Shown here: in pieces, positions 21,801-28,346 of the stretch | Layout: the number at the start of each line of letters is the position of its first letter | How positions within the stretch are numbered: the stretch's first letter is position 1 | From: Thecamonas trahens ATCC 50062 | Lineage: Eukaryota; Protista; Apusomonadida | Length of the DNA: 64,000 nucleotides | Direction: 5' to 3' | Assembly (NCBI RefSeq): GCF_000142905.1 | Contig: NW_013657658.1 | Location: 186,001 to 250,000, forward strand | Translations under genes and position numbers: made by a program | The notes under the pieces: model-generated | The model's input: only the letters and a program-made list of their open reading frames with translations | What the model was told of the DNA's origin: nothing | Database searches by the model: none

Positions 21801-22307
21801 GTGCTTGCGCAGCTGCACTCATATTTCGCAAGCACCCCAATCCATTGCGTGATGCCCATCCCTCTCCGTAGTCAGTCGTGTTGCCGCCTGCACCACAGGT
21901 CGCCGTCAGCCGACCGCTGTCCGAGTCGGATCGAAGCTGCCGCCACCTTCCTACAACCGCCCCGCCCCGCCCCTACCCCCTAACCCCTTCCCCACCTTCC
22001 ATCCACCCACACACCCATCCACGCATTCTTCCTCTTCACCCTTTACTCGTCTTCGCTCCAGTCGTCCTCTACGTACCTTGGTGACAAAGCCCGAGGGCTT
22101 GGGCGGACGGGCGCGCTCATAGGTGGTCAGGTGGAGCCGGACGCCCGACTCGACCAGCAACGAGGGCTTGCGACCACGGGCTTGGAGCTTGAACAGCAGG
22201 GTCCGCCCGGTGAGGTCGTAGATGTTCTTCACTGAACACCCGATGATCTCAGGTCCAATCATCTTGAGCATCGCTGCCACATCAAGCGCCGTGAACGTGC
22301 CCTTCAT
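18822..22307 (-). CDS. NEMF: Ribosome quality control factor NEMF/Rqc2 (NFACT family); exon 1 22307-22077, intron 22076-21813
   Basis: MKGTFTALDV..NIYD..ESGVRLH..PSGFVTK|LRKHLR..QLGIDR..ELYDQGNVVLLD. NFACT-R motifs WFEKFNWF..GRDAHQNELLVKRY..YVHADIHGA and SKTAPSGEYLSTGSFMIRGKKNFL. NFACT-C motif KYKVKLVPG.GKKGKA. Confidence 0.95.
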
Positions 22308-22426
22308 CTGGCTGGGTGCGAGGGGAGAAGAGACGAGTGGTGGCCGGCTCGGCAAGGTCGCACACAGCCTGATCAACAACCGCTATCGTCGTCACCAGCA
22401 TGAAACTAGTTCACTCGCTCGGTCCT

Positions 22427-25400
22427 CTACTTGTTCTTAAAGTCGTCCACGCGCCGGCTCAGGACCCGTCGCTTCTTGGGGCCGGCCTTGAGCCGGTCGC
22501 CGACGGACTTGCGCGACTTGAGCACCTCCTCCATCTCGCGAGGTGACGCCGGCGGCTTGTTGCCGCCGATGGTGAGCTTGAGCTCGATAGCCTTCTTGGA
22601 CGCCCGACGCGCGGCCATCCGCAGCTTGTGGGCGGCCTTGCGCTTTTTGGCGGCGTCGCGCTCGCGCTGCTGCGCGTTTTGCCGCGCCGAGAGCTGCCAT
22701 TCTTGCGCAAACGAGTCGAGGATGCCAAAGAGCTCCTCCGACGGCGTCTCCTTCTCGCCGAGCTTCGCGCACAGCGCGGTGAGGCCCTTTTCTACGAGCG
22801 AGAAGAGCGGTTCGATGCGGTTGAGCTCGGTAGTAGCGCGCTCCACAAACTCGCCGAGCTTGTCCTTGAGCACGTCGGTCGCCGGCACCGTCGCCAGCTG
22901 GCTCTCCACCGCCCGCACGTCTTTGCGCAGCCGGTTGTAGTCGGCCTGGAGCACTGCCACGCCGACCTTGGATGCCTCGTTGCACCCCTCCAGCGCAGTG
23001 AGGAACGCCTTTTCCGTCCCGGGATACCGCTCTTCCACAAAAGACTGAATGTAGTGCAGCAGGTGCTGCCTCCCGTTCGCTGCCTTGGTCCCTTTCAGCT
23101 TGAGGAGCGACGCCAGCGGGAGAGCCTTGACCCACGTCTGGTTGACAAACGACGCAATGGCGAGAATGATTTCCAGCAGCTGCTCCAGTGCCTCAGACGA
23201 CCGCACAGCCTCGACCGTCCGTGCGTTGAGCTCGAGCTTCTCCGAGATCTCCTGCACCTTTTCGCCAAACTCGAGCTGGAGCTGCAGTGCTGTCAGCCGC
23301 TGGTGGACGTTGGGAATGTTGGCAACAAGAACAAAGAACTGCTCGGCCTCGCCGAGCCTGGCCAACGCCTTGGCGTCGCCCTCGTTGTCTTGCATGTAGT
23401 CGTCGAGCTCGCGCTCCTCCTCCGGCGTGATCCACGCCTTGAGCAAGTCCTTGATCCGGTCTGCTGTCAGCAGGCCGTCGTCGAGGTCCATGATCGCGTC
23501 GCGGATGGCAGGCAGCGGCGCCTTGAACGACCGCAGCAAAAGGCACACGTTGTTGCTCCTCTTGTTGGAGAGAATCGCCACACGCTTCGGCGCAGCCTTG
23601 ACCGCCGCCTTGGTCGACGGCGCCTTGGCCTGGAACAGCTCCTCCAGCACGTTGTAGTCGAGCCGGATGTTGCGCGGATTGAGCTTGGAGTAGAGCGAGT
23701 CCTCGACCTTGACTCCGCGCGCCATCCTTCCCAGGAAGAGCTTCCGCATCTTGACATGGGCCTTGCGCGGCGTGTTTGGCCGCCCACCGCCGCGTCCGAA
23801 CCCGCCCGGTGGCGGTGGCGGTGGCGGTCCTCCACCCGGCGGCGGCGGTGGCGGAGGCGGGCCACCTCCTGGCGGCGGCGGTGGCGGAGGCGGCGGAGGT
23901 GGCCCGCCGCCACCCGGAGGTAGCGGCGGGATCGCCGGCGGCGGTCCGTCTCCGACCTGCTCGCCGACCGCTGTGGGGCCGGCAGGCCCGCCACTGCCGC
24001 CTGGCCCGCGCCCGGGAAGTCTAAACGCGCGAATGACTTTGGTCATCATCACAATGCGCTTGGCAAAGCGCCAGAACCGCGGCAGCCGCTGACGGCCGTA
24101 CGTCTGCGACCGCGCGTGCTCGAGCCGCTTCTTGAGCTTGGTAATCTCAAACAACATGGCCTCGACCGATTTGGCGTACTTGCGCTTGAGCGCAGCGTAC
24201 CGCTGCCTGTGCATCGTCTCCATAGTCTGCTTCGCGGAGACCATCTGCTGCTTCAGCGACTCGTTCCGCTCCTCGAGCATTCGCATCTGGTCCGGCGCGT
24301 CAGCCTCCAGCAGCGCCACCCGGTCCTCGAGCTCGCGCCGCTTGAGGTCAAACTGCGACTTTTCACGCTCGAGATCGTCCACCGACCGCGAGTACTGCAG
24401 CGCATCAAGGAGCGAGGTGAACGACTTGCCGAGCGGCATGTCCGAGGTACCCGCCAGCGATGGCGGCATCGGCGACTCACGCCCGTCGCCGTCGGCCTCG
24501 CCGGAGGGCGGCGTGGCGCTCCCGCCCGGACCCACCACCGCAATGGTCACCTCGGGCCGTGCCGCGCTCGCCGCGCTCGCCTTGGGCCGCCCCAGCATCT
24601 CGCATGCCAGGCTATCAAAGGCCTCCGAGACACGGCCCCACATGGCGTCTCCTTTGGTCCCCGATGCAGGCATGGCCACCAGCATCTGCATGAGCTTGAC
24701 AAACGCGCCAAAGTGCGGCGTCGTCCGCAGATTGAACTTGAGCCGCTCCGCCACCTGGACTGGATCCGACAAGTCCATGTCGTTGAACTTGAGCCGCTTT
24801 GCATCGGCCTCTGCGTACTCGCGGTATGCGTCGATTTGCGTCGAGAGATCGATTGATCGCGTCGCGGATAGCTCCTCCAGGATCTCATCGAGCTTGAGCG
24901 CAGAGAGCTCGCGCCGGAGGTCAACCCGAGTGTTGATGTCGGTCGAGAGGTTGACGAGCGTGTTGATGAGGCAGAGGAGTTCGGCCTGCACCTCCTCAGC
25001 CTCGTGCCCACTTCGGTTTCCGTCCTCGCTCTCGGACGCATCATCAGAGACGGCAAACTTGAGCATCTTGACAAGCGTCGAGAACCGGACCTTTTCCTTC
25101 TTGAGCACCTTGAGCTCGTCAAAGCCGGTCCGGACTAGACCCCGGCCCTGCTCCGAGTAAATGGCGATGCCGGAGAGGAGCTGCGCCGCGCGGATGACTG
25201 CGTCGTTGTTGGTTGTGTCGAGCGAGGCCGTGATGATGTTGACGTAGTCCTGTGCCATGCCGGCCTCGACTCCGGGCATGGTATCAAAGAGCGTCGCCAG
25301 CGTCGAGAGCACTGCGCTCTCAGTGTCGATCTCGTCATCAGTCTTCTTCGACTTGGACGAGAGGTTGTGCAGCAGGTCGATGAGGGTGGTAAAGCCGAGC

Positions 25401-27792
25401 TGGTCGATGAACTCGGCGATCCACGAGTCCGGCGCCACGTCGATGGTCTCCTCCAACTCGCGCAGCGACTCGGCGTCGGCGTGGACGTTGAGCATGGTGA
25501 TAAAGTACTCGGGCGGCCGCAGCCCAACCGAGACGTCGACTTGCGACGCCTCGTCGCCGCCAGGCGTCACCGCCGTCGACGAGAGCCCGCCGTCGTCTCC
25601 ACCGGGAGTCAGCGGCCGCTCGGCCTCGCCGCCCGAGCTCATCGCCGGGTCCGCAATCGAGCTCAGCGACGGCGCGCCGGTCGAGAGCGAGTCGCGTGTC
25701 CGCCCAAACACAGACCCGCGCCGCCGCCGCAGAAACGCCTGCGTGCCGGACGGCGTCGACTGGAGTACAAATGAGCCGCGAGGGCCCGTCCGACTCACCG
25801 CCAGACTGCCGCTCCCCTTGGTCGGCTGGAGGCCCATCTTGGCGTCTTGCAGCTTGGCCACGGCGTCGAGCAGCGCCCGCTTCGCCGCCCGATCCTCGGG
25901 CGTCTCTACAAACGACTCGACCGCGTTTCGCACTCCGCCCACCGTCCGGTGCAGGAGCTCGGCGTGGTACCGATACTCAGCAGCGATGGCATCGTTCGGC
26001 GCCGATACTGCGCCTTTCTTGAGCAAGTTGCCGAGCGCTCTGACCGTGTTGGTGGCGTAGTGCTCGTCGGCCGAGACTCGCTCGACGTCACCGGTCGCCA
26101 CCGAGATGTACATCCGCGAAATGGCGACGCCCACAGCCTGCGCCGCCTCTTGCACCGGCGCAGAGGCGTAGAGGAGCTCCTGTGCTGTCCCGCCAGTCTC
26201 GCTCGTAGATGGAGTGTTCACATCGTCGTCTCCCGAGAGACTCAGCTTGAGCCGCCGCTTGCGTGCAAAGAGCTCAGCCCGGGTCGAGCTCTCGTCCTCC
26301 GACTCCTTGCCGCTGATGGTGAGCGATCGTGAGCGGACAAGGCGCGCCCGCGCATCATCGCCGCTCCTTCGGACGCCCATGTCGTCGAGCTCCTGTCGCA
26401 TGTGCCGCGGCAGTGCTGCCAGCGGCCCGAGCGACTTGGAATGCTCCAGCGTAGTCTCGCAGGAGGTGTTGCAGCCCGAGTCTGAGCTCGAGCCCGAGCC
26501 CGAGCCCGAGTTGGGCACGACCGCGATGTGTGCCATCGAAGAGAGCGCAATAACGTCCGAGGTTCCAGAGCCTGCGCCTGAGCACGAGCCTGAGCTCGAG
26601 CCTGAGTCCGAGCCGCGGAAAAACGATGACGGCTTGCGGGAGAGGACTGAGCCGAGCTCGGACTCATCGTCGTCGTCGTACGCGATTTCCAGCACCGACG
26701 GCTGGACAAAGACGCCGCGAAGTGGCGGGCACGCAAAGTACGTGACATCGTCGACGCTGCCGTTGTTCTTGCCGACCTTCTCGTCAAGCTCGACGCCGAC
26801 CCACGTCCCGCGCGCAAAGTGAGTCTCGCCAATGAACCGCACCACGCCCGAAACTGCACCGAGGACACGGACCCTCGTTCCCGGCGCCATGTTGGAAATG
26901 ATGACTCGTTGGCCCAGCGACGACGACGGGAGCGATGACCAGATGTCAGGGTCTGGTCGTCCATCGTGTGCCGACCGCACCACCTCAACCACGTTATCAT
27001 AGTGGCCATGGCCGTGCGCCGGGAGCGGCTCGTGCGACGCTGCGCCCGTCGGCGACGCACTGGCGCCGCGTGGAAGCAACGGCCGGAACTGGATTCGGTG
27101 CCGAAGCGCATGGGCTGCGGGAGGCAGCGACGTCGCTCGGTTGCTGGGTCTACTCGATCGAGCCGGCTCGCCCACCCGGGCCGGCGAGTCGAGCGTCGCC
27201 GGCCGGTTCTGGCGTGAAGCTCCACGGCGCACGTTCTTGAGTGCAGACCCTTCTGGCTCGCGGACTCGCGGCTCACCGCCAGGTGACCGGCGTGAACGCG
27301 ACCGTCGGCGCGAGCCCGAACGTGACCCCGATCGCGAGCTGGGCCGATCGACGGCCCGCGGGCGGGCACGTGTCTGTGGCTGCGGCTGTGACCTGCTCGT
27401 CTTTCCGGAGAGCTGGGCGAGCAGCGCCGAGTTGTCATCGGAGAGGGTGTAGTCTGTCGGAATGGCGTAGCGATTGCGGGCAAGAGCGACGTTCTCCGGG
27501 CGGACAAAGACACCGCAGCGGCGCGGGCAGCGAAAGTAGCGGGCGTTGACGTCCTTGCCGTCGCAATTGCCAAGCGGTGCCGCCAGCTCCAGGCCGAGAA
27601 ACACACCTTCTCGGAAGGCCGCGGTCCGACATAGCGAACAAGGCCCACCACCGACTCGCCACGGAGGCGGACCTCGACGGCAGCGCCCACCGATGGGGTC
27701 TTGCGGGCCGCCGCCCGTGCCCTGGCCAGGGTGGCGGCGTAGTAGGCTTCACCCGCCCCCGTAGCAGCAGCAGCAGCAGCAGCATCAGCCAT
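22427..27792 (-). CDS. Formin (GBD/FH3, coiled coil, FH1, FH2) with two N-terminal CAP-Gly domains; frameshift near 27623
   Basis: CAP-Gly 1: GLVRYVGP..FREGVFLGLEL..PLGNCDG...RYF.C....GVFVRP. CAP-Gly 2: GVVRFIGETHFARGTWVGVELDEKVGKNNGSV....YF.C....GVFV. FH3: WIAEFIDQLGF and LINTLV....RVDLR.EL. Poly-Pro FH1. FH2: LEELF, KRSNNV, LGEAEQF, LASLLKL.GTK, LLHY. Confidence 0.9.
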
Positions 27793-28259
27793 GTGCCCCC
27801 GCCCCTGTTCCACTCGGTTTCCCTCCAACAGGTATCCAAGGGCACGGTCGTGGGGCGTGGAATGGGTGAGGTGAAGTGTTGCTGGTACGTAAGGGGGGGG
27901 GGGGAGGGGGGAAGGTCAACCATACCGTCGCCGTGGGCCGCCCCTGCCGCAACGGGTCGAACAACCAAAGCCCACCCCCACACACTCCCCTGACACAGCC
28001 ACTCAACAAACCAATGAACAACATGCGCAAATGGCAAAGATGACATGCCACCCGCCAGCCCACCACCAATAACCCTCGGCAGCGGGGGGGGGGCGGCGTT
28101 GGCGCGGAGCCATNNNNNNNNNNNNNNNNNNNNNNNNNNNNNNNNNNNNNNNNNNNNNNNNNNNNNNNNNNNNNNNNNNNNNNNNNNNNNNNNNNNNNNN
28201 NNNNNNNNNNNNNNNNNNNNNNNNNNNNNNNNNNNNNNNNNNNNNNCTCAACCTTGCCC

Positions 28260-28314
28260 CCCACCCACCACCACCACCACCACCACCACCACCACCACCA
28301 CCACCACCACCACC
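28260..28314. repeat. (CCA)n trinucleotide tract upstream of the lipase gene
   Basis: Seen directly. Confidence 0.9.
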
Positions 28315-28346
28315 CTCCACCCATCACCTTACACTTGTAGCACATC

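What the first reader, a model, noticed from the sequence alone, without database searches (positions are those of the whole stretch)
22427..27792. Formin carrying two N-terminal CAP-Gly domains: a candidate microtubule-tip-anchored actin nucleator
Seen: one reading frame (with a single missing base inside CAP-Gly 1) encodes CAP-Gly (~27690-27490), CAP-Gly (~26890-26690), GBD/FH3 (~25530-24780), a coiled coil, FH1 (~23950-23800) and FH2. CAP-Gly 2 through FH2 lie in one uninterrupted 1725-aa ORF, so the fusion does not depend on the repair. Established: CAP-Gly domains bind the EEY/F tails of alpha-tubulin and EB1, and animal mDia1 reaches plus ends by binding the separate CAP-Gly protein CLIP-170. 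Inference: this gene hard-wires that partnership into a single Rho-regulated actin-microtubule coupler. I do not recall this architecture among the standard formin classes.
Basis: partly seen in the sequence, partly recalled or inferred. Interest (0 to 1): 0.8.

Follow-up and report, generated by a model that had tools for sequence, protein, structure and literature searches.

The report
CAP-Gly formin of Thecamonas trahens
One gene of the gliding flagellate Thecamonas trahens really does join two microtubule-type CAP-Gly domains to a complete actin-building formin; it is one of five such genes in this genome, a design no searchable paper describes and nobody has tested.

Summary
On the minus strand, 22427-27792, one gene encodes CAP-Gly, a basic linker, CAP-Gly, a Diaphanous-type DID/FH3, a coiled coil, FH1 and FH2. 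All four Pfam families score far above their cut-offs. CAP-Gly 2 through FH2 lie in one 1725-aa ORF with coding-type GC3 throughout. CAP-Gly 1 is split by one missing base, and the domain spacing leaves no room for an intron.

The genome is Thecamonas trahens. The gene is AMSG_05276, listed as an unclassified formin in Pruyne 2017, which does not mention CAP-Gly.

The fusion is not a one-off. Three other formin genes here carry CAP-Gly and FH2 in one ORF, and a fifth carries them in two overlapping frames. This scan has already followed up two of those sister loci (s1-746493, s1-743419). I found no protein with both domains outside this species and no paper describing one, but my searches could not cover all architectures.

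Function is inferred. CAP-Gly 2 is about half identical to CLIP-170 CAP-Gly 1 and keeps the Lys-Asn of the binding motif. The organism's alpha-tubulin ends in EEY. A formin that docks on microtubules is therefore the likeliest reading. "Rho-regulated" is not supported, because no G subdomain was detected. CAP-Gly 1 and part of the FH2 are degenerate.

The parts
27613..27792 (-). Start codon (ATG at 27792) and the first 60 codons in the ATG frame. They hold an Ala-rich N-terminus and, from about 27690, the first third of CAP-Gly 1.
   Evidence: Reading of three frames. This piece alone is too short to give a Pfam hit.
27611..27625 (-). Frameshift site inside CAP-Gly 1. One base is missing relative to an intact domain. 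It is either an assembly error or a very recent mutation.
   Evidence: The ATG frame ends with VRYVG and the main frame resumes with AAFREG at the canonical CAP-Gly spacing. This rules out an intron.
27488..27690 (-). CAP-Gly 1. It is split by the frameshift, and its binding motif is degenerate (GNCDG instead of GKNDG).
   Evidence: The CAP_GLY match at 27488-27619 covers profile positions 22-65 at 43.3 bits, E 9e-10. It is also the second CAP_GLY stretch.
26882..27487 (-). Basic Ser/Arg/Pro-rich linker between the two CAP-Gly domains (pI 11.8, 34 K+R against 15 D+E). It holds two SxIP-like motifs, at aa 158 and 223.
   Evidence: Composition computed. The comparison with the basic serine-rich flanks of CLIP-170 rests on my own knowledge.
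26696..26881 (-). CAP-Gly 2, a canonical domain with the motif GKNNG.
   Evidence: Pfam match at aa 242-303, profile 2-63 of 65. 89.3 bits in the own-genome scan. E 8e-20 to CLIP-170 CAP-Gly 1, PDB 2e3i.
25514..26695 (-). Linker of 394 codons, Ser/Gly-rich and partly helical, with no family match.
   Evidence: No Pfam hit. In-frame GC3 is 0.77-0.84. No detectable similarity to the linkers of the paralogs.
24653..25513 (-). Diaphanous inhibitory domain / FH3 (armadillo repeats). No G subdomain was detected upstream of it.
   Evidence: Drf_GBD 4e-10 (profile 69-187 only) and Drf_FH3 5.6e-21. INF2 DID 1e-15 and mDia1 DID 1e-8.
24104..24373 (-). Predicted coiled coil / dimerisation region (aa 1078-1167).
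   Evidence: Heptad-like charged and hydrophobic sequence read directly. It is an inference; no predictor was run.
23807..23944 (-). FH1: four polyproline tracks separated by Gly.
   Evidence: Sequence read.
22694..23758 (-). FH2 domain.
   Evidence: Pfam FH2 7e-59, 200 bits, profile 8-372 of 372. Confirmed in the own-genome scan. The GNxMN motif is replaced by ASFVN and the knob Ile by Leu.
22427..22693 (-). Basic C-terminal tail (pI 11.7) with a weak DAD-like motif (MEEVL followed by a basic cluster), then the stop codon.
   Evidence: The DAD assignment is an inference from the motif only.
28114..28246 (.). Assembly gap (133 N) lying 320 bp upstream of the ATG. The 5' limit of the gene is therefore not secure.

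Best explanation
This is one real protein-coding gene of Thecamonas trahens (AMSG_05276). It encodes a Diaphanous-like formin (DID/FH3, coiled coil, FH1, FH2, basic tail) with an N-terminal CLIP-170-like head: CAP-Gly 1, a basic Ser/Arg-rich linker, and CAP-Gly 2.

Shown here: the domains, their order, the single reading frame, four similar paralogs, and the EEY tail on this organism's alpha-tubulin.

Inferred: the FH2, DD and coiled coil make the protein a dimer, so each molecule presents two canonical CAP-Gly 2 domains plus two basic linkers. These bind the EEY tails of tyrosinated alpha-tubulin, and possibly an EB protein. That places the FH1-FH2 actin-assembly unit on microtubules or at their growing ends, so actin filaments are nucleated and elongated from microtubules. 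In this reading one polypeptide does what animals do with two proteins (CLIP-170 plus mDia1). CAP-Gly 1 has lost the Lys-Asn of the binding motif and probably has another role or none. The missing base inside it is most likely an assembly error.
For: All four Pfam domains score far above cut-off in one 1725-aa ORF, and coding-type GC3 runs across the linkers.

The same CAP-Gly then FH2 order occurs in one ORF at C9, C12 and C48 of the same genome, and in two overlapping frames at C31. An assembly or ORF accident is therefore excluded.

CAP-Gly 2 matches CLIP-170 CAP-Gly 1 at 8e-20, with 35 of 65 aligned residues identical by my count and the Lys-Asn of GKNDG kept. The inter-domain linker is basic, pI 11.8. 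Alpha-tubulin of this genome ends in EEY.

Two metagenome contigs that are 99.8% identical differ from the window only by three synonymous changes in the ORF and one change outside it.

The CLIP-170/mDia1 interaction in animals is documented in PMC2606960.
Against: No binding, localisation or transcript data exist.

CAP-Gly 1 is frameshifted in the only assembly and carries GNCDG in place of the binding motif.

This FH2 is the only one of the genome's 19 with ASFVN instead of GN[YF][LM]N. It lacks the following GF and has Leu at the knob Ile, so its actin activity may be altered.

The one EB1 exon found ends without EEY/F, so EB-dependent tip tracking is doubtful.

CAP-Gly is attached to many unrelated partners in this genome: myosins, ankyrin proteins and an ADP-ribosylglycohydrolase. 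Its role here could be more general than plus-end tracking.
Confidence: 0.6

Rival explanations
1. The fusion gene is real, but the CAP-Gly head is not a microtubule anchor. It instead recognises another C-terminal acidic-aromatic tail or a zinc-knuckle partner, or it folds back on the formin as a regulatory module. The protein would then be an ordinary formin with a lineage-specific targeting or regulatory domain.
For: CAP-Gly occurs at about 45 loci of this genome and is joined to very different partners. That pattern fits a general adaptor domain. Beta-tubulin here also ends in an aromatic residue (EPEY), while the EB1 exon found does not. From my own knowledge, CAP-Gly domains in animals also bind non-tubulin partners such as EB1, SLAIN and the CLIP-170 zinc knuckles.
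Against: CAP-Gly 2 is closest to the tubulin- and EB-binding CAP-Gly domains of CLIP-170/CLIP-115. It sits next to a strongly basic linker of the kind that favours microtubule lattice binding. The EEY ligand is present on alpha-tubulin. The formin's own C-terminus ends in FKNK, which is not a CAP-Gly ligand.
Confidence: 0.2
2. The frameshift is real. Either translation starts at the first in-frame Met of the long ORF (aa 239, just before CAP-Gly 2), giving a formin with a single CAP-Gly, or the gene is starting to decay.
For: The only assembly shows the shift. CAP-Gly 1 already has a degenerate binding motif. The region at aa 101-200 shows no GC3 excess (0.76/0.71/0.71). This FH2 is the most divergent at the GNxMN motif. 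A search of JGI metagenomes for the site found no independent copy.
Against: Both halves of CAP-Gly 1 are still recognisable, free of stops and at the exact domain spacing. GC3 over aa 1-100 of the long ORF is 0.77. The rest of the gene is intact over 1725 codons. The second strain carries only synonymous changes. The sister gene at C31 also shows its two halves in different frames, and earlier notes on this assembly report single-base errors.
Confidence: 0.15
3. There are two neighbouring genes, a CAP-Gly protein and a formin, that only appear fused because stop codons are rare in 65% GC DNA.
For: High-GC DNA here does produce many long spurious ORFs on other frames.
Against: The two parts share a frame over a 394-codon linker with coding GC3. 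The chance of that stop-free run is about 4e-5 by my estimate. The same arrangement recurs in one ORF in three other, very divergent paralogs. The public model of the paralog AMSG_02330 is a single 2018-aa protein with CAP_GLY, FH3 and FH2.
Confidence: 0.03

Closest known systems
T. trahens paralogs AMSG_02330 (C9), AMSG_03357 (C12), AMSG_07139 (C31) and the C48 gene
   Same: Each has N-terminal CAP-Gly (one or two copies) followed by FH1-FH2, and most also have DID/FH3. C31 is the closest overall, at 263 bits over the DID-to-FH2 part. Like this gene, it has two CAP-Gly domains with GNCDG in the first.
   Different: Only 26-30% identical in FH2. The linkers show no detectable similarity. The FH2 tree does not resolve them as one clade, but the AU test does not reject one either (p 0.17). 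C48 lacks a DID.
Diaphanous-related formins and INF2 (animals)
   Same: The order DID/FH3, coiled coil, FH1, FH2, basic tail. The DID is closest to the INF2 DID (1e-15) and the mDia1 DID (1e-8). The nearest FH2 relatives of the paralog C9 are vertebrate DIAPH1/3 at 30-33% identity.
   Different: No animal formin has a CAP-Gly domain; none of the roughly 330 formin and CAP-Gly hits I inspected did. No G (Rho-binding) subdomain was detected here. The DAD is only a weak motif.
CLIP-170 / CLIP-115 (+TIP proteins)
   Same: Tandem CAP-Gly domains flanked by basic Ser-rich sequence on a protein expected to dimerise. CAP-Gly 2 is about 54% identical to CLIP-170 CAP-Gly 1.
   Different: There is no long CLIP-type coiled-coil rod, no C-terminal zinc knuckles and no ETF tail. 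The C-terminal half is a formin. The first CAP-Gly has lost the GKNDG Lys-Asn.
CLIP-170/mDia1 complex (animals) and the Tea1/Tea4/For3 relay (fission yeast)
   Same: A CAP-Gly or other plus-end protein brings a formin to microtubule ends to trigger local actin assembly (PMC2606960 and PMC2172381, seen; the accelerated-elongation work of Henty-Ridilla 2016 is from my own knowledge).
   Different: In those systems the link is a non-covalent complex of separate proteins. Here the two activities sit in one chain. The functional equivalence is untested.

Membership tests
Formins (FH2 proteins) | FH2 domain above the curated threshold | tested here: met
   PF02181 at 200 bits against a cut-off of 34.8, covering profile 8-372 of 372.
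Formins (FH2 proteins) | Proline-rich FH1 directly upstream of FH2 | tested here: met
   Four polyproline tracks at aa 1221-1266.
Formins (FH2 proteins) | Conserved actin-contact and structural residues (knob Ile, post Lys, GNxMN motif) | tested here: inconclusive
   Leu replaces the Ile. The Lys of the TK motif is kept. ASFVN replaces GNxMN, uniquely among the 19 paralogs.
Formins (FH2 proteins) | Nucleates and processively elongates actin filaments | not testable with these tools
   Needs pyrene-actin or TIRF assays.
Diaphanous-related formins (DRF) | DID/FH3 armadillo domain | tested here: met
   Drf_FH3 5.6e-21. INF2 and mDia1 DID structures matched.
Diaphanous-related formins (DRF) | N-terminal G subdomain that binds Rho-GTP | tested here: not met
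   The Drf_GBD match covers only profile 69-187. Alignment to mDia1 in 1z2c starts at chain position 88, after the G region. Other formins align only from query residue about 470 onward. The 80 residues upstream are low-complexity.
Diaphanous-related formins (DRF) | C-terminal DAD (MDxLL plus a basic cluster) | tested here: inconclusive
   Only a loose MEEVL motif followed by basic residues. There is no family model for it.
CAP-Gly domain proteins | CAP_GLY domain above the curated threshold | tested here: met
   PF01302 at 115 bits with two stretches. The two domains score 89.3 and 43.3 bits separately.
CAP-Gly domain proteins | GKNDG motif that grips the EEY/F carboxy-terminus | tested here: inconclusive
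   CAP-Gly 2 has GKNNG, with Lys-Asn kept. CAP-Gly 1 has GNCDG, with both residues lost.
CAP-Gly domain proteins | A ligand tail present in the same organism | tested here: met
   Alpha-tubulin at C1 ends in EEY. The EB1 exon found does not end in EEY/F.
CLIP-170 family | Long central coiled coil plus C-terminal zinc knuckles and an ETF tail | tested here: not met
   No such Pfam families are found in the protein, and its C-terminal half is a formin. It works like a CLIP head but is not a CLIP.

The most novel reading that the evidence does not exclude
CAP-Gly formins are a distinct, apusomonad-specific formin class that tracks or decorates tyrosinated microtubules by itself and launches actin filaments from them. 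As a natural 'Rosetta stone' fusion, it would also argue that the CAP-Gly/formin partnership seen in animals (CLIP-170 with mDia1) reflects an old functional link in the lineage leading to animals and fungi, not a vertebrate peculiarity.
Probability: 0.3. Interest if true: 0.7.

Novelty: new variant of a known kind. Interest (0 to 1): 0.55.

Why it matters
Cross-talk between microtubules and actin is usually mediated by complexes of separate proteins. Those complexes are hard to dissect. A natural single-chain fusion of a plus-end-type microtubule module with an actin nucleator gives a minimal, testable coupler.

By gene-fusion logic, it also gives independent support for the CLIP-170/formin partnership. 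Apusomonads are close relatives of the animal-fungal lineage. They glide on a microtubule-supported cell body and also extend actin-based pseudopodia. A five-member family of such formins, alongside myosins that also carry CAP-Gly domains, suggests this organism ties its two cytoskeletons together unusually directly.

The limits should be clear. The proteins are already in public databases, and the paralog AMSG_02330 carries automatic CAP-Gly, FH3 and FH2 annotation. This scan has already reported two sister loci. Everything about function is inference.

Tried and rejected
- **Word searches for relatives.** Three searches were run: the whole protein, a profile of four CAP-Gly formins and the FH2 of the paralog C9. 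None found a protein outside T. trahens with both PF01302 and PF02181. Candidate picking was swamped by low-complexity words. One search did not even return its own member AMSG_02330. These are weak negatives.
- **Full HMMER search.** I searched 1.84 billion representatives with aa 225-1424. I scanned all 308 fetched proteins with my own CAP-Gly and FH2 profiles. Only P0168 (AMSG_02330) had both domains. A calibration shows that paralog-level relatives (182-263 bits) would have been listed, but a C48-like one (43 bits) would not. Two paralogs that should have scored were missing, so the library is not complete for this genome.
- **ESM Atlas.** The window protein could not be read. The nearest clusters to the paralog P0168 are ordinary DRFs.
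- **JGI metagenomes.** No contig spans the frameshift site. Seven related loci each carry CAP-Gly or FH2, never both.
- **Single origin of the fusion.** This is neither shown nor rejected. The FH2 tree is unresolved. The AU test gives p 0.17. The linkers show no BLASTP similarity. CAP-Gly 1 is not specifically closest to the other GNCDG domain at C31.
- **Other dead ends.** One search used a wrong frame and is void. An exact look-up of five neighbouring ORFs found nothing. An intron as the cause of the frame change was rejected because the domain spacing leaves no room.


Full report
**What is there.**
The window is 65% GC. On the minus strand it holds a 1725-aa ORF, 22427-27604. Pfam places these domains on it:

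| Domain | Residues | E-value |
|---|---|---|
| CAP_GLY (two stretches) | strong one at aa 242-303 | 1.4e-33 |
| Drf_GBD | aa 698-814 | 4e-10 |
| Drf_FH3 | aa 828-984 | 5.6e-21 |
| FH2 | aa 1283-1637 | 7e-59 |

Between FH3 and FH2 lie a charged heptad-like segment (aa 1078-1167) and an FH1 of four polyproline tracks (aa 1221-1266).

**The N-terminus and the frameshift.**
- The nearest upstream ATG, at 27792, is in a different frame. That frame encodes an Ala-rich start and the first third of a CAP-Gly domain, ending in VRYVG.
- The long ORF continues with AAFREG and the rest of the domain. The two halves meet at the exact spacing of an intact CAP-Gly. One base is therefore missing near 27611-27625, and an intron cannot be the cause.
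- The second half is a significant CAP_GLY match by itself (43.3 bits). The 60-codon first piece alone gives no hit.
- I searched the pieces apart and did not build the joined protein.
- An assembly gap (28114-28246) lies 320 bp upstream of the ATG, so the 5' end is not fully secure.

**One gene, not two.**
- In-frame GC3 is 0.71-0.92 over the whole ORF, including the 394-codon linker between CAP-Gly 2 and the DID.
- By my estimate, a stop-free run of that length in random sequence of this composition has a chance of about 4e-5.
- More telling, the arrangement recurs. A six-frame scan of the window's own genome found 19 FH2 loci and at least 73 CAP_GLY matches.
- CAP_GLY and FH2 lie in the same open frame at C9 (2021 aa), C12 (1646 aa) and C48 (946 aa). 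At C31 they lie in two frames that overlap by about 200 nt.

**Which organism and gene.**
- Earlier notes of this scan name the genome as Thecamonas trahens. I checked this.
- The first residues of five FH2 domains taken from this genome match, letter for letter, strings printed for T. trahens AMSG proteins in the supplement of Pruyne 2017.
- P0168, which is identical to the C9 ORF and sits on a contig of the same length, is named AMSG_02330 of T. trahens ATCC 50062.
- This gene is AMSG_05276 in those alignments. The paper's S1 table prints AMSG_05726, with subtype 'n.d.'.
- The paper surveyed these formins. It says only that many are 'supplemented with additional domains' and never mentions CAP-Gly.

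**Quality of the domains.**
- CAP-Gly 2 is canonical. It matches CLIP-170 CAP-Gly 1 (2e3i) at 8e-20, with 35 of 65 aligned residues identical by my count. Its motif is GKNNG, which keeps the Lys-Asn.
- CAP-Gly 1 has GNCDG, so both key residues are lost. The first CAP-Gly of the C31 gene has the same variant.
- The linker between the two domains is strongly basic (pI 11.8) and carries two SxIP-like motifs.
- The DID aligns best with the INF2 DID (1e-15) and with mDia1 only from after its G subdomain. The Pfam GBD match also lacks profile positions 1-68. The 80 residues upstream are low-complexity. Rho regulation is therefore not supported.
- The FH2 is complete but is the odd one out among the 19 paralogs. 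It has ASFVN where the others mostly have GN[YF][LM]N, it lacks the following GF, and it has Leu at the knob Ile.
- The tail is basic, with only a loose DAD-like motif.

**Context that bears on function.**
- Alpha-tubulin of this genome ends in EEY, the classic CAP-Gly ligand. Beta-tubulin ends in EPEY. The single EB1 exon found ends without EEY/F.
- CAP-Gly is promiscuous in this genome. About 45 loci carry it, including three myosin-head ORFs with two C-terminal CAP-Gly domains, ankyrin proteins and an ADP-ribosylglycohydrolase.
- Two ENA metagenome contigs are 99.8% identical to 22230-24167. They share three synonymous differences in the ORF and one in the flank. This fits a second strain and a gene under constraint, though three sites prove little.

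**Most likely mechanism (inferred).**
- The formin dimerises through its FH2, DD and coiled coil. It therefore presents two canonical CAP-Gly domains plus two basic linkers, as a CLIP-170 dimer does.
- These dock on EEY tails of tyrosinated microtubules. That places FH1-FH2 where it can start and elongate actin filaments from microtubules.
- Animals achieve this with CLIP-170 bound to mDia1 (PMC2606960). Fission yeast does it with the Tea1/Tea4/For3 relay (PMC2172381).
- I put 0.6 on this reading. I put 0.2 on a non-microtubule role for the CAP-Gly head, 0.15 on a real frameshift (a single-CAP-Gly or decaying gene), and 0.03 on two genes.

**Is it known?**
- No paper in the searchable library combines CAP-Gly with FH2 or formin domain architecture.
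- No protein outside T. trahens with both domains turned up. This covers 120 + 41 + 62 word-search hits, the best 150 of a full HMMER search of 1.84 billion representatives, the Atlas neighbours of the paralog and seven metagenome loci.
- A calibration shows the HMMER search would have listed relatives as distant as the paralogs C9, C12 and C31, but not one like C48. None of these tools performs a true architecture census, so the absence is provisional.
- The paralog AMSG_02330 is in NCBI and UniRef with CAP_GLY, FH3 and FH2 annotated automatically. The design is visible in databases but undiscussed.
- This scan has already followed up two sister loci with the same conclusion, five such genes and none described (s1-746493, s1-743419). 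I reached the count independently before reading those notes.

**Origin of the family.**
- The FH2 tree is largely unresolved. C9 and C31 are sisters (99/96). C12 pairs with a CAP-Gly-less formin at C44 (97/95).
- Holding all five together is not rejected (AU p 0.17).
- The linkers share no detectable similarity. CAP-Gly 1 is not specifically closest to any formin CAP-Gly.
- One old fusion followed by divergence and a loss, or several fusions in a genome that shuffles CAP-Gly freely, both remain open.

**Verdict.**
This is a new variant of a known kind: a Diaphanous-like formin with a CLIP-type head. It is real and recurrent in one lineage, and it is uncharacterised. Its interest is moderate, because the proteins are already public and the function is untested.

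Noticed in passing
G000:C46:278199-283160, C25:165365-170146, C30:318788-322417 (loci L031, L032, L035): Three myosin-head ORFs each end in two CAP-Gly domains. This organism therefore also attaches the microtubule-type domain to actin motors. The 2014 pan-eukaryotic myosin survey (PMC3942036) does not mention CAP-Gly in its main text.
   Followed up: partly
Whole genome G000; L036-L041: At least 73 CAP_GLY matches at about 45 loci in a 28.7 Mb genome. Partners include ankyrin repeats and an ADP-ribosylglycohydrolase (C3:375917-378721), plus several multi-CAP-Gly proteins. From my own knowledge this is a large complement compared with animals or yeasts.
   Followed up: partly
L025 (C1:223561-223950), L027 (C38:233962-234327), L029 (C3:577244-577333): Alpha-tubulin ends in EEY and beta-tubulin in EPEY. 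The only EB1-domain exon found runs to a stop after an acidic tail without EEY/F. EB1 may have a further exon that I did not look for.
   Followed up: partly
window 22230-24167; loci L043, L044, L042: Two ENA metagenome assemblies (ERZ23486198, ERZ27274872) hold contigs 99.8% identical to the 3' part of the gene, with the same four differences. This points to a second strain or to culture DNA in those samples. L042 (ERZ505273) is a low-coverage chimera in which only 406 nt match.
   Followed up: partly
window 22694-23758: This FH2 is the only one of the 19 in the genome with ASFVN in place of the GNxMN motif and without the following GF. It may have unusual actin activity.
   Followed up: partly
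L004/L005 (G000:C31:128503-138239): The C31 CAP-Gly frame (1129 aa) and FH2 frame (2186 aa) overlap by about 200 nt in a Pro/Ser-rich stretch. This fits one gene of about 3200 aa broken by a single-base shift. I could not pin down the site.
   Followed up: partly
window 28114-28320: A 133-N assembly gap is flanked by a (GGT)n run at 28265-28320, just upstream of the gene's start.
   Followed up: no
Pruyne 2017 supplement (PMC5628938): The S1 table lists AMSG_05726, while the alignments carry AMSG_05276 with this gene's sequence. The digits were probably swapped in the table.
   Followed up: yes
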